From Diadema antillarum (lineage: Eukaryota): 64,000 bases of DNA. Positions within the stretch are counted from its first letter, which is position 1; each line of letters starts with the position of its first letter. The stretch lies in assembly GCF_040938485.1 (NCBI RefSeq), contig NW_027270916.1, positions 2,170,001 to 2,234,000 of the forward strand, in the 5' to 3' direction. Position numbers and translations under genes: made by a program. Below are positions 908 through 55,700 of this stretch, piece after piece. Under the pieces are notes generated by a model. It had not been told where the DNA came from. It searched no databases and was given only the letters and a program-made list of their open reading frames with translations.

Positions 908-1066
908 GTAGTCTGTGTAGTTGTTGCGTGTGTGTGTGAGTATGCTGTGTTTGTGTACGTGAGTGTTTGTTCCACACACACACTCTCTCTCTTCGATCAC
1001 ATCCTTTGACAAGCACTAACAGATAAATAGACAGATAAAACGTTATTTGTAAGTGGCATAATATAC

Positions 1067-1072
1067 TTTATT
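1067..1072 (-). terminator. Poly(A) signal AATAAA of SGNH copy 1 (homologous sites at 5175, 13363, 22893, 36628, 43184, 46713, 51927)
   Basis: Plus-strand tttatt about 150 nt past the stop codon in all 8 gene-bearing units. Confidence 0.7.
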
Positions 1073-1222
1073 ACAGAAATCCAGCAACATGCTGTTACAA
1101 AACATAAATTACAAATGTACAATGGGCATAGATAAAAAGTCCACAGTTCCAGCCCATGAAAAGTAAACTGCAGTCGTCGAGCATCCACATAATGTGAGTC
1201 GCACGTAGTAAAATCTCTGATT

Positions 1223-52095: not shown

Positions 52096-52719
52096 CTAGT
52101 CCATCTTGTAAGCTTTCATCACGGCGCCTCTGATGCTGCGGTAGTACCTCAGCATGCCTGCCTCGTTGAAGTGAACTCCATCCTGCATAAAGAGCTTGCT
52201 GTGGTTCAGGGCAAAGGAGCGATGCCGCCAGAAGTGGACGTTGGGTAAGTTTTCCAGGAACTTGGCCAGGAGCCGGTTGGTGTCGTGTACGGCTGCGTTG
52301 AAGTCGGTCTTCCACTTAGGGACGAAGAGCCGGGGGATGATGCTGCAGACAAGAACGTGACGGACTCCAGGAATGCGAGCTATGCGGAGGGCAAGATCTA
52401 GAAGGGCAGTGACTGTGGATTCGGTGGTTGCACCTAGCTCGCAGAGATCGTTAGAGCCGAGATCGATGACCACAGCGTCGGGCGACAGCTCCCAGACGAG
52501 ATCGAGCTGCGATGACGCTGAGAAGACGTTACCAGGCTGGGTATATCCGACGTCTTGAAGGAAGGCAAGGACAGAAGACTTCTCTAGAGCCAGGTTGCTT
52601 CGGGTTGGGTCCCTCTCGATGAAGCTGTTGAGGCTGCCAATGTAGCTGTGGCCGAGGACCAAAACGACAGGTGGTTCGCGATCGGACTCGCAGCTTTCAG
52701 TTGAGCTTCCAGTCGACAT
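52096..52719 (-). CDS. SGNH hydrolase copy 8 (207 aa, intact, most divergent, at the array edge)
   Basis: All motifs retained. Many third-position differences, a divergent leader and the E2F variant TTTCCCGG at 52910-52917. Confidence 0.9.
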   Translation of the reverse strand: MSTGSSTESCESDREPPVVLVLGHSYIGSLNSFIERDPTRSNLALEKSSVLAFLQDVGYTQPGNVFSASSQLDLVWELSPDAVVIDLGSNDLCELGATTESTVTALLDLALRIARIPGVRHVLVCSIIPRLFVPKWKTDFNAAVHDTNRLLAKFLENLPNVHFWRHRSFALNHSKLFMQDGVHFNEAGMLRYYRSIRGAVMKAYKMD

Positions 52720-55700
52720 CGTGATGACTTTTGTTCGAACTGGAGGATAGGTCTGAGAAGCAGGGTATAGAGGTCTCGATGCACTGCTCGATAGCGGAGA
52801 CGATACTCAATGATGATGGAGATCGATGTCTTTCGAAGTTCAAGACGAGTTTGATCGAAATCATTATAAACTCTCAGCTATTTAAATGCAACTCGAAGTT
52901 GAAATCCAGTTTCCCGGAATCGTTCTGATTGGTTTATCTAACGCACCAATGAGCGTAGACTGGTTTGACACAATAGGGAAAGCCATCCTATTGTTATGTA
53001 ATTAACTTGATCGGAGAGGAGCGGAGATGCGATCCCGTGGACCAGCGTGGAACAATAGACTGCTTAAACGGTTCGGACAATAGAGGGGCGAGCAGATCTG
53101 AGTTCGTAGAAGACCATGGCACGCGATCGAGAAAAGGACTATCGTAGTGAAGTAGGCCTACATGTATTCCATCAAGACTTCACGAATTCGCCCGGATCTA
53201 TAGCTGCATGGTTTTACTGAAATATTGCACATTACACTTTTGGAAATTATGCGTTGTACCTCTTTTAGTATCGACTAAAACACGCACCAAAAAACAAAAA
53301 CAAAACAAAAAACACAAACACACACACACACACACACTTTAAATACTAATCGAATAAAAAAAAAACCACCAAACGACACAGACATGCTCACACTCTTTCC
53401 CCTTCAAAGATATGTTTGTTCCCAAATATGAAATGACAACAATTTCGTCAACGAAGTAGCAATGTCGGCAACAAAACGACAATTCAGGAACAAAATTGCT
53501 ATTTCGTCGACGATATACAAATTTCGTTACGAAATTGGGTCGTCACGAAATTGTCATTTCGTTGACAATAAGCTTATCCTAGAAGTTAAGGATCACCGTC
53601 TGCTGGTCTGAACGTAACTATTGAAACCTTCTGTAACCGCGTGGATTAAAAGAATAATTTTCTCCCCAAGAGATGAATGAATCAAAAAGTTATTAAAAAT
53701 GAATACACATAACAGCTTTTCAAATACATATACGATTGTATAGGAAATAGAAACTCTTCATGGACCTGATCTTTTGGTTATAATAACTGCAAAGCATGAA
53801 TTAAGAATGACTTGTTTTATTGCACTCCGTGACAAGGGTATGAGACAAAATATCGCAACAATCTGGAGTTTTCGAATGTATGTTGCTCTGAAAATCGATT
53901 CATTCTACTTGAGAAGTATAATACAAAATACATGTCCATACATGTTGCTGAACCTATGAACCCATGTTCAATATTGATGGCCTTTAAAGGTCGTGAACAA
54001 GTATGTACACGCACTAGAGAACACGAAGTCCATGAATTAAGCATTATTGGTGATTTCTCAATCTTAAAACAACTGCCTTGTCGGCTGTTCAGACTTGATT
54101 GACGGTAAAGTCACGCTATATTCTTCTCAAGACCATCGTCAGTGTCTCCTCAATAACTTACGCACCCCCCCCCCCCCTCATGAGCTTTGCCCAGTGGGTA
54201 TGAATTCTATAGGCCTAGCTGATAGACAGGTATCAACCTCTCCTATTGTGATCCAATCAACTAATTGACTTATCCTATATTACCGAGGACAACGAATAAA
54301 AAAGAGGATGGGACAATAGGGAAGTGCAGGAGACATGAGATCATTACACCTACAATACCAACCAGTCGCACTGTTCGGTTCTTTCAATTCATTAAGGAGA
54401 CTTACTTCTCTATAGGTGTAGGACTCACCTGAAAACGATTAACTCATTTTGGGAGCTCATTACGTCATCAATAGCACCTCAGAACAATAAAACATGAAAG
54501 GTGGGAAGGGGAGGTTTGGGGGAGATGTGTAGGGCTAGTGCAATGTATGTACAACTATGTACTACATGTACGTATTACCACGGAGGTACCATAGGCGAGC
54601 TGCCTCCTTGATATTACTATTTTCACAAATGATAACTCTAACAATCTTAACCTTATCTAAAGTTATGAACGTTCGCGTGTGACTGTTTGGGAAGGACGTT
54701 TATTCGTGAGTACTAGGGTGTCTTTGCTAACGATGCAAATACAATTATGTACAAAGTATAACTTCTCGCCTTGCACCTCCTTTTCTGTGTACGAAAGCAT
54801 AGCCTGTTTTTACAACAACCTCTAAAATTCTTGCGTCGAGTTGTTTCACTGCAATTGATTAACAAATTGACGTCGATGGAGGGCAATTTGTCAATCAGTT
54901 GCCATAAATTATGCATGCTATTTACTACATCGTATTCGTTTTCACCGAGCTTGCTGTACATTTCACTACTGACGAACTTTTCTTCTTTATCTGATTCTTC
55001 CGATCTTCTCTATCTGTAAGAGAAAAGATACATGTATACATAGCTGTATATATTATGTATGCAGTGTATACATAATTACACATGTACAAACATGGAGCTT
55101 ATGTATGTATGTGTGTGCCTGCATGTGAGTGTGCGTGTGCGTTGTGTGTGTATGTTTGTGCTCGTAGTACTACTACTTCATTTTGAAGTTTCGAAATCTT
55201 TATGTTCATATAGGGCCTACATCCGTACACAGGTTTTAGTCGTCACAAAGAAGAAGAAGAAAAGAAGAAGTTCTTCACCAGCACTACCATGATAGTGAGA
55301 TAGGTGTCCAATCGCACTTCAAATGTTATTCAAGTCATGACCTTCTATTTCAGTAAATAAATTCAATATCGATCATATCATTAAATTCGTCCGGAGATTT
55401 TTGGTCCGGAGATTTTTGTATCAAATTATTTGTATATTATGTTTCCATTGATGAAGAATAAAATATTCTTTAAAACAAAAAACAATTCGTCCAAAGTGTG
55501 ACTGCTAGCGACGATTACATGTATGTCAGTTTTGAAGCAAAGAAAAAAGTTAGAGGAAGAAATGTGCGGATAATTACCAACTGTACTGTATATACGGTAT
55601 CTCGCGTTCAAATTCACTTGTAGACGTAGAGGGCAGCTTCGTAGCAACAGACCTCGGCGAGGTACTGTGGAAGTCAATTCATGTGCGAGTTCGGTGTAGC

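What the first reader, a model, noticed from the sequence alone, without database searches (positions are those of the whole stretch)
908..53390. 52-kb gene-bearing array: 8 SGNH hydrolase genes among about 18 geneless promoter units
Seen: about 26 related units, only 8 with the intronless esterase ORF (1223, 5316, 13504, 23039, 36784, 43340, 46870, 52096). The D/H catalytic residues are kept in all 8, many between-copy differences are synonymous, and each has AATAAA and a promoter. Inference: an actively evolving birth-and-death gene family inside a complex satellite. The excess of empty units could act as an enhancer battery, a transcription-factor sink, or simply recombination substrate. 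I know of no described system with this layout.
Basis: partly seen in the sequence, partly recalled or inferred. Interest (0 to 1): 0.85.

Follow-up and report, generated by a model that had tools for sequence, protein, structure and literature searches.

The report
Sea urchin tandem esterase gene array
A 52-kb stretch of the sea urchin Diadema antillarum genome is a head-to-tail array in which a small intronless esterase gene, related to an accessory gene of Ngaro-type retrotransposons, is repeated 8 times among 18 old copies of the same unit that have lost the gene; it is a real selection-maintained tandem gene family of a known general kind, not a new genetic system.

Summary
Window 908-53290 is one same-orientation modular array with 8 SGNH/GDSL ORF copies on the minus strand and 18 ORF-less units. 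Only 5 ORFs are full length (one has N->H in the GxND block). One has an in-frame 11-codon deletion, one a premature stop, and one is truncated and lacks its promoter. The ORF is under purifying selection (omega 0.23 within the species, 0.19 against D. setosum). The ORF-less units are not promoter units. They derive from two old deletions that removed the TATA box or the sequence from about +25, plus the ORF. They keep only the upstream CCAAT pair and evolve at the synonymous rate. All unit classes recur in the gapless D. setosum locus and group by class rather than by species, so the array is not an assembly artefact and predates that split. All eight N runs replace the same non-coding (TA)n(TG)n microsatellite. 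Two other echinoid-type lineages carry the gene in homogeneous 3.05-kb and 1.93-kb tandem repeats. The nearest non-echinoid homologs lie inside Ngaro-like tyrosine-recombinase retrotransposons, but no RT or YR is present here. Closest known kinds are coding macrosatellites and tandem gene families. The scan had already noted parts of this on the same window.

The parts
908..53290 (-). Whole modular tandem array; every module is in one orientation and the gene strand is minus
   Evidence: Self-BLAST depth and module map
1223..1846 (-). SGNH ORF copy 1: intact, 207 aa, motifs GHSY / GSND / DGVH
5316..5711 (-). SGNH copy 2: truncated to the C-terminal 131 codons; the 5' part and promoter are replaced at 5699 by foreign sequence
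13504..14127 (-). SGNH copy 3: intact, 207 aa
23039..23662 (-). SGNH copy 4: full length, but block III reads GSHD (the oxyanion Asn is replaced)
36784..37374 (-). SGNH copy 5: 196 aa, with an in-frame 33-bp deletion
43340..43963 (-). SGNH copy 6: premature stop at codon 192
46870..47493 (-). SGNH copy 7: intact, 207 aa
52096..52719 (-). SGNH copy 8: intact, 207 aa; the most divergent lineage, nearer the D. setosum copies
1847..2584 (-). Example promoter region: 172-bp TATA-like box (TTAAATAG at -169) plus 5'UTR, then module A (565 bp) with paired ATTGG(-233)/CCAAT(-215) boxes
908..1222 (-). Example 3' flank module, with AATAAA 151 nt after the stop codon
44869..46418 (-). Reference type-1 ORF-less unit (modules B, A', C). 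A' abuts B at 45490/45491; this junction recurs in 16 units
21650..22116 (-). Type-2 ORF-less unit: module A, a 35-bp stub of TSS region, then the 3' flank starting directly after the stop-codon position. A second copy lies at 34467-34935
27928..32537 (-). Two adjacent 2.2-kb ORF-less units that are 99.7% identical. Their B modules keep a 66-96 bp relic of ORF codons 84-115
44701..44868 (.). Unmasked example of the (TA)n(TG)n microsatellite module. All eight N runs in the window sit at the homologous position
34936..36245 (-). Long spacer E, found after gene units, containing a D-like core. It is array sequence, not foreign DNA
5699..6270 (-). Foreign insertion or replacement with a weak RNase H match; unrelated to the Ngaro-like RT/RH tested
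7730..8993 (+). Foreign insertion with a reverse transcriptase fragment (RVT_1, E 5.5e-17) on the opposite strand
48547..49526 (+). Foreign 980-bp insertion with a 181-aa ORF that has no Pfam match

Best explanation
This is a tandemly amplified, intronless gene for a small cytosolic SGNH serine esterase, about 207 aa with no signal peptide and a PAF-acetylhydrolase-Ib-alpha-like fold. It is held in a kilobase-unit array, that is, a coding macrosatellite or tandem gene family.

The inferred ancestral unit of about 3 kb reads, on the gene strand: upstream module A with paired CCAAT boxes, TATA and 5'UTR, ORF, 3'UTR with AATAAA, then spacer including a dinucleotide microsatellite.

Unequal crossing-over and deletion reshuffle the units. 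Purifying selection keeps the ORF. Two ancient deletions each removed the core promoter or the sequence from about +25, together with the ORF. The resulting dead units were then copied along with the live ones until they outnumbered them.

Shown: the anatomy, the direction of change (gene-bearing to geneless), selection on the ORF, neutral-rate evolution of the dead units, the age of the classes, and the presence of the tandem layout in other echinoid-type lineages.

Inferred: that the multicopy state serves dosage, that the enzyme is active, and that the gene shares ancestry with the SGNH accessory ORF of Ngaro-like tyrosine-recombinase retrotransposons through domestication. The direction of that transfer is not shown.
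For: Pfam Lipase_GDSL and Lipase_GDSL_2 match above their cut-offs. The AF2 model has pLDDT 93.5, and its top PDB matches are PAF-AH Ib alpha subunits. Blocks I, III and V are intact in the good copies.

The module map is in a single orientation. The B module is homologous to the gene's 3' flank. Base-level junctions show that both empty-unit types retain pieces of the transcription unit.

Omega is 0.23 (CI 0.14-0.38) within the species and 0.19 (CI 0.10-0.32) between species.

The D. setosum chromosome-scale locus L006 has the same gene units and both empty-unit types with no N. The A-module tree groups by unit class across species. A-module K2P between species is 0.10-0.15, against dS 0.144.

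Circularly permuted contigs from many metagenomes give homogeneous 3.05-kb and 1.93-kb tandem units with one gene each. S. purpuratus proteins are 77% identical.

The nearest non-echinoid homologs (33-36% identity, E 8e-25) sit in elements with RT/RNase H, a tyrosine recombinase and split direct repeats. SGNH ORFs in Ngaro elements are published (PMC9210276).
Against: No transcript evidence was available here. NCBI gene models exist, but their N-terminal extensions look like prediction artefacts.

Three of the eight copies are defective and a fourth has a changed oxyanion Asn.

The D. antillarum assembly is about 2.5-fold redundant and was built from roughly 11x HiFi depth, so exact unit order and number in this window may be imperfect. 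The second array, L001, may be a haplotig rather than a second locus.

The taxa behind the metagenome contigs are inferred only from protein identity.
Confidence: 0.8

Rival explanations
1. The array is a fossil multimer of a non-autonomous, SGNH-only Ngaro-like retrotransposon. On this reading, module A, the gene, the 3' flank and then A'-B are the remains of split direct repeats (A1, internal region, B1, A2, B2). The A'|B junction would be the element's own A2-B2 junction rather than a deletion. Arrays would have grown through tyrosine-recombinase-mediated integration of circles into resident copies.
For: L007 shows that SGNH-only elements bounded by 100%/99%-identical split direct repeats exist in another animal genome. 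L008 is a full element with SGNH, RT/RH and YR and an A1...B1A2...B2 arrangement. The gene-strand order in the window, A-gene-3'flank-C-A'-B with B homologous to the 3' flank, mimics that pattern.
Against: No RT, RNase H or YR related to those elements is found in the window, L001 or L006. A versus A' is only about 81% identical and 3' flank versus B only 61-65%. Spacers C, D and the microsatellite separate the supposed repeats, and all variants are explained by deletions from one A-gene-B-microsatellite-D-C unit. The TATA box lies outside A, so a transcript would not carry A. A second, independent junction type exists. The D. setosum cluster members that were listed all lie on one chromosome-scale scaffold.
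Confidence: 0.1
2. The array is a neutral complex satellite that happens to carry a dead or dying ORF, and the apparent constraint is an artefact of recent homogenisation.
For: ORF-less units outnumber gene units 18 to 8. Three copies are broken. The non-coding modules evolve at the neutral rate.
Against: Omega is 0.19-0.23 with confidence intervals excluding 1, at dS 0.10-0.14, which is not recent homogenisation. Amino-acid identity to S. purpuratus is 77% although the flanks are unalignable. The ORF is kept open in three further lineages.
Confidence: 0.05
3. Much of the array is an assembly artefact, produced by over-expansion or mis-joining of a short repeat in a redundant low-coverage assembly.
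For: The assembly is 1.75 Gb against an estimated 0.70 Gb haploid size, from about 11x HiFi depth. Two adjacent units are 99.7% identical. N runs recur at one unit position.
Against: Units differ by 5-25%, and their classes match those in an independent, gapless, chromosome-scale D. setosum assembly. A second D. antillarum contig shows the same grammar.
Confidence: 0.05

Closest known systems
Coding macrosatellites (for example the D4Z4 array with DUX4, RS447 with USP17-type genes, and TAF11-like arrays; PMC3018141, PMC5687341)
   Same: Kilobase-scale head-to-tail units, each built around an intronless ORF with its own promoter. The organisation persists across species. There is a mixture of intact and defective units.
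   Different: Here most units have lost the ORF through two specific old deletions. The units are heterogeneous (5-25% divergence, several length classes) rather than near-identical. The product is an enzyme rather than a transcription factor or deubiquitinase. Copy-number polymorphism and chromatin state are untested.
Sea urchin tandemly repeated early histone genes and other birth-and-death tandem gene families (from general knowledge)
   Same: Intronless genes with CCAAT/TATA promoters repeated head to tail in echinoids. Purifying selection on the coding part, free evolution of the spacers, and pseudogenes within arrays.
   Different: One gene per unit instead of five. A polyadenylation signal rather than a histone stem-loop. 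Paralog lineages predate speciation, so this is birth-and-death rather than strong concerted evolution. No expression data.
SGNH ORF of Ngaro-type tyrosine-recombinase retrotransposons (PMC9210276; loci L002, L007 and L008 here)
   Same: A stand-alone SGNH ORF of about 200 aa. The best non-echinoid matches to the window protein (33-36% identity) are such element-borne ORFs. A repeated upstream module and a repeated downstream module are both present.
   Different: No RT/RH or YR. No high-identity split direct repeats. Tandem rather than dispersed. The protein tree shows a slowly evolving, tight echinoid clade.
Esterase domain of CR1/L2-type LINE ORF1 proteins (PDB 4c1b; PMC3905857) and PAF-acetylhydrolase Ib alpha subunits
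   Same: The same SGNH fold. The family profile matches both at E of about 1e-9, and the top structural matches are PAF-AH Ib alpha.
   Different: No coiled coil or PHD domain, and no ORF2 downstream. Sequence identity is only about 20%. The substrate is unknown.

Membership tests
SGNH/GDSL hydrolase superfamily | Sequence match to the family models above the curated threshold | tested here: met
   PF00657 at 42.3 bits (cut-off 23.6) and PF13472 at 36.6 bits (cut-off 32.9)
SGNH/GDSL hydrolase superfamily | Conserved blocks carrying the catalytic Ser (I), the Asn of the oxyanion hole (III) and Asp-x-x-His (V) | tested here: met
   GHSY, GSND and DGVH are present in copies 1223, 13504, 36784, 43340, 46870 and 52096. 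Copy 23039 has GSHD and copy 5316 lacks block I. G23, N90, G181 and H183 are invariant, and S25 nearly so, across 40 homologs. The block II Gly was not assigned.
SGNH/GDSL hydrolase superfamily | Three-layer alpha/beta/alpha flavodoxin-like fold | tested here: met
   AF2 pLDDT 93.5 and pTM 0.89. Foldseek probability is 1.00 to PAF-AH Ib alpha and many GDSL esterases, with TM 0.6-0.68
Coding macrosatellite / tandem gene array | Head-to-tail units of at least 1 kb in a single orientation over tens of kb | tested here: met
   All modules are on one strand from 908 to 53290, with unit lengths of about 2.2-3.5 kb
Coding macrosatellite / tandem gene array | An ORF with its own promoter and poly(A) signal in each unit | tested here: inconclusive
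   True for 7 of 26 units in this window. True for every unit in the 3.05-kb and 1.93-kb repeats of other lineages
Coding macrosatellite / tandem gene array | Copy-number variation between individuals | not testable with these tools
   Needs population long-read or depth data
Birth-and-death multigene family | Purifying selection on coding sequence, pseudogenes, and paralog lineages older than speciation | tested here: met
   Omega is 0.19-0.23. There are three defective copies. ORF and A-module trees mix species within lineages and classes
Ngaro / YR retrotransposon | Reverse transcriptase/RNase H and tyrosine recombinase ORFs in the element | tested here: not met
   tblastn with L008 and L002 RT/RH and YR proteins finds nothing in the window, L001 or L006 at E<=0.01
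Ngaro / YR retrotransposon | Split direct repeats A1...B1 A2 B2 with A1=A2 and B1=B2 | tested here: not met
   A versus A' is about 81% and 3' flank versus B is 61-65%. They are separated by spacer modules, and a simple deletion model explains the pattern. For contrast, L007 shows 100% and 99%
Ngaro / YR retrotransposon | Homology of the SGNH ORF to element-borne SGNH ORFs | tested here: met
   P0027 matches at E 8e-25 and 36% identity. The L008 SGNH ORF matches at 33-37% identity over about 200 aa (131 aa for the truncated copy) by tblastn
CR1/L2 LINE ORF1 esterase | The esterase is part of an ORF1 followed by an ORF2 with endonuclease and RT | tested here: not met
   Downstream of each ORF lie only the 3' flank and array spacers. 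The single RT fragment is on the opposite strand inside an insertion

The most novel reading that the evidence does not exclude
Echinoids have kept, for more than 200 million years, a retrotransposon-derived (Ngaro-type) SGNH esterase as a high-copy coding macrosatellite. Its tandem organisation, rather than any particular flank, is what has been conserved. In Diadema the array has been largely taken over by ORF-deleted units. If the gene is expressed in bulk, for example maternally as with the early histone arrays, this would be a new class of domesticated transposon gene whose function depends on tandem dosage.
Probability: 0.2. Interest if true: 0.7.

Novelty: new member of a known kind. 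Interest (0 to 1): 0.45.

Why it matters
This gives a clean, datable example of how a tandem gene array decays and renews. Two base-resolved deletions created dead units that have been co-amplified for longer than the age of two species, while selection kept the ORF.

It also links an uncharacterised, echinoid-wide multicopy esterase to the poorly understood SGNH accessory ORFs of Ngaro-like retrotransposons. That offers a tractable host-side system (sea urchin embryos) in which to ask what these esterases do.

For genome annotators, the 'uncharacterized protein' models in Diadema with N-terminal extensions are probably mis-started, and the ORF-less units should not be read as regulatory elements without evidence.

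Tried and rejected
1. A Tandem Repeats Finder run with periods up to 500 found nothing. The units are too long and too heterogeneous, so I used BLAST-based module mapping instead.

2. I tested whether module B is a decayed ORF. It is not. Only three B copies hold a 66-96 bp ORF relic. The 3' half of B is the gene's 3' flank.

3. I looked for an ncRNA or tRNA in the 'geneless' units. There is no Rfam family at gathering score and no tRNA.

4. I asked whether the RT and RNase H fragments in the window are remnants of a Ngaro element. They show no similarity to the L008 or L002 RT/RH/YR proteins, and the RT fragment is on the other strand.

5. The single-sequence search against the PDB gave only weak hits. 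A family profile was needed.

7. Three S. purpuratus-type contigs could not be read as DNA because the sample file is too large. Only their gene tables were used; one shows two same-strand copies 4.9 kb apart.

8. Pfam on ORFs in both flanks of the array gave nothing.

9. Literature searches for this gene and its accessions, and for sea urchin SGNH tandem arrays, found no description.
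Full report
**What is there.** The window comes from the sea urchin Diadema antillarum. The 207-aa ORF at 1223-1846 (minus strand) is 98% identical to NCBI 'uncharacterized protein' models of that species, in assembly GCA_040938485.1. Self-comparison shows that 908-53290 is repetitive at a depth of 7-26, while 53.3-64 kb is unique.

**Module map.** Mapping one gene-to-gene interval (43340-46869) back onto the window covers 73% of the array, all in one orientation. 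A finer map resolves these modules on the plus strand: 3' flank (451 bp), ORF (624), TATA plus 5'UTR (172), A (565), a dinucleotide microsatellite (about 168), B (622), A' (a diverged A) and C (377). Nearly all the remaining 'unassigned' DNA is also array sequence. It consists of a D spacer of 450-485 bp and a 1.1-1.3 kb E spacer with a D-like core. Only 5699-6270, 7730-8993 and 48547-49526 are clearly foreign insertions; three short segments (17976-18109, 25270-25608, 41805-41918) also match nothing else in the array.

**The N runs.** There are eight, not six. Each lies where unmasked units carry (TA)n(TG)n. For the two runs whose flanks both align to an unmasked unit, 168 reference bases correspond to 165 and 160 N, so the sequence on either side is collinear. 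No N run is in or near an ORF. I did not read or infer the masked letters.

**State of the eight copies.**
- Five are full-length.
- Copy 23039 has GSHD instead of GSND.
- Copy 36784 has an in-frame 33-bp deletion.
- Copy 43340 has a stop at codon 192.
- Copy 5316 keeps only 131 C-terminal codons and no promoter.
- Seven copies share TTAAATAG at -169, CCAAT at -215 and ATTGG at -233.
- All eight have AATAAA 136-164 nt after the stop codon.

The longer NCBI models (222-245 aa) start at upstream ATGs or at spliced mini-exons within the promoter region, and these look like prediction artefacts. The S. purpuratus homologs start at the same Met as the 207-aa ORF.

**Selection.** Nei-Gojobori estimates give dS of about 0.10 and omega 0.23 (bootstrap 0.14-0.38) among D. 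antillarum copies. Against three D. setosum copies they give dS 0.144 and omega 0.19 (0.10-0.32). S. purpuratus proteins are 77% identical although their flanks cannot be aligned with Diadema.

**What the 'geneless promoter units' are.** The 3' half of module B is homologous, at 61-65%, to the gene's 3' flank.
- In 16 units the end of A, just 5' of the TATA box, is joined to 3'UTR sequence about 100 nt past the stop codon and about 35 nt before the poly(A) signal. This is one junction that has been amplified (type 1).
- In two units the first roughly 25 nt after the TATA region are joined to the first bases after the stop codon, and the TATA box has lost 6 bp (type 2).

Both types keep fragments of the transcription unit, so they are deletion derivatives of gene units and not empty target sites. 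They also lack a core promoter. They do retain the ATTGG-N15-CCAAT pair.

**Age and reality of the layout.** A gapless, chromosome-scale D. setosum locus (L006) holds three genes plus type-1 and type-2 units with the same junctions. In a joint tree, the A modules group by class (gene-linked, type 1-I, type 1-II, type 2) rather than by species. Some D. antillarum ORFs are closer to D. setosum ORFs than to their own neighbours. The classes therefore predate the species split, and the array is not an assembly artefact.

Between species, the proximal 280 nt of A differs by K2P 0.135 (gene-linked), 0.123 (type 2), and 0.148 and 0.098 (type 1). That matches the ORF's synonymous rate, so there is no sign of constraint on the empty units as a whole. 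Two adjacent empty units are 99.7% identical, which indicates very recent duplication.

A second D. antillarum contig (L001) has the same grammar at 90-98% identity, plus one inverted solo gene unit inside a tRNA-synthetase gene model. Because the assembly is about 2.5-fold redundant, L001 may be a haplotig. Its flank does not match the window's flanks.

**Other lineages.** A protein in the same 90% cluster as S. purpuratus XP_011665236 lies on eight metagenome contigs. These are rotations of one unit of about 3.05 kb, 99% identical, with terminal overlaps. A 67%-identical protein lies on nine contigs that are rotations of a 1,925-bp unit. Each unit has one gene. Another contig of that type has two same-strand copies 4.9 kb apart. 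Tandem organisation thus goes with the gene across echinoid-type genomes. That these units assemble from ocean metagenomes suggests high copy number, but this is an inference.

**The protein and its relatives.** The AF2 model is confident (pLDDT 93.5) and matches PAF-acetylhydrolase Ib alpha subunits best. A family profile also matches the LINE ORF1 esterase 4c1b at E 3.8e-9. I see no N-terminal hydrophobic signal by eye.

An exhaustive search finds 1,228 clusters of mostly 190-210-aa stand-alone homologs at about 30-36% identity. The ESM Atlas places them in molluscs, cnidarians and chordates.

The best non-echinoid hit and its relatives (named members come from siboglinid annelids) lie in retroelements:
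- L008 reads A1, SGNH, RT/RNase H, tyrosine recombinase, B1-A2, B2.
- L002 has the same gene order.
- L007 is an SGNH-only element with 100%/99%-identical split repeats.

SGNH ORFs in Ngaro elements are published (PMC9210276), as are esterases in LINE and LTR elements (PMC3905857, PMC5408684). The echinoid proteins form a tight, short-branched clade inside this long-branched family. No RT, RNase H or YR of that kind is present in the window, L001 or L006.

**Reading.** The simplest account is a tandem gene family, or coding macrosatellite, evolving by unequal crossing-over under purifying selection, with dead ORF-deleted units hitch-hiking. The gene is homologous to a retrotransposon accessory ORF. 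Domestication is plausible, but its direction is untested.

The idea that the A-gene-B...A'-B order is a fossil of split direct repeats is attractive, but several observations count against it: the low repeat identity, the intervening spacers, the TATA box lying outside A, the second junction type, and the fact that one ancestral unit plus deletions explains every variant.

No paper describing this gene or array was found. Earlier notes of this scan on the same window had already raised the Ngaro lead, the amplified 0.9-kb junction and the RNase H swap. I tested the first two and they hold as described above.

Noticed in passing
L007:6589-9386: A short element in an annelid-type genome: A1 (6589-6888), SGNH ORF (7001-7648), B1 (7969-8265), A2 (8263-8562) and B2 (9090-9386), with repeats 100% and 99% identical and no RT or YR. 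It appears to be a recently mobile, non-autonomous, SGNH-only Ngaro-like element.
   Followed up: partly
L008:6562-13740: A full Ngaro-like element in which the SGNH ORF occupies the first (gag) position, ahead of RT/RNase H and the tyrosine recombinase, with a 63-bp tandem repeat after it. In published amphibian Ngaro elements the SGNH ORF follows the recombinase.
   Followed up: partly
L009-L016 and L017-L025: Identical echinoid-type SGNH proteins recur in many independent ocean metagenome assemblies (Tara and others), as circular permutations of 3.05-kb and 1.93-kb tandem units. This suggests very high copy number in planktonic echinoderm DNA.
   Followed up: partly
window 5654-6270: A 572-bp foreign segment with a weak RNase H match (E 2.8e-4) replaces the promoter and the first 76 codons of copy 5316, in the same orientation. 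Its source element was not identified.
   Followed up: partly
window 7706-8702: A reverse transcriptase fragment (RVT_1, E 5.5e-17) on the plus strand, inside a 1.26-kb insertion between two A-type modules.
   Followed up: no
window 48547-49526: A 980-bp insertion that interrupts a B module. It has a 181-aa ATG ORF (48560-49105) with no Pfam match.
   Followed up: no
window 1-907: The left flank, read on the minus strand, looks like a frameshifted retroelement gag or ORF1 with a CCHC-like motif near the window edge. Pfam found nothing.
   Followed up: partly
L001:17302-18676: A single gene unit (part of B, 3' flank, intact ORF, promoter, 226 bp of A) is inverted relative to the adjacent array and lies inside the gene model of an aspartyl-tRNA-synthetase-like gene.
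   Followed up: no
P0028 (2341 aa): A protein model from another organism has six consecutive matches to the window's SGNH protein, plus a weak OSK-domain hit. It is probably a tandem array of this family fused into one gene model.
   Followed up: no
window 28392-28457, 30771-30836, 33140-33205: Three type-1 empty units carry a 66-bp piece of the ORF (codons 84-115, 91% identical) embedded in 3'-flank-like sequence. This points to a rearrangement or a conversion tract from a gene unit.
   Followed up: partly
window N runs (8): The published description of this assembly (a hifiasm HiFi assembly) does not use the word 'gaps' (0 occurrences). The N runs all replace one microsatellite module, with lengths close to the unmasked copies. 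Whether they are masks or true gaps could not be decided.
   Followed up: partly
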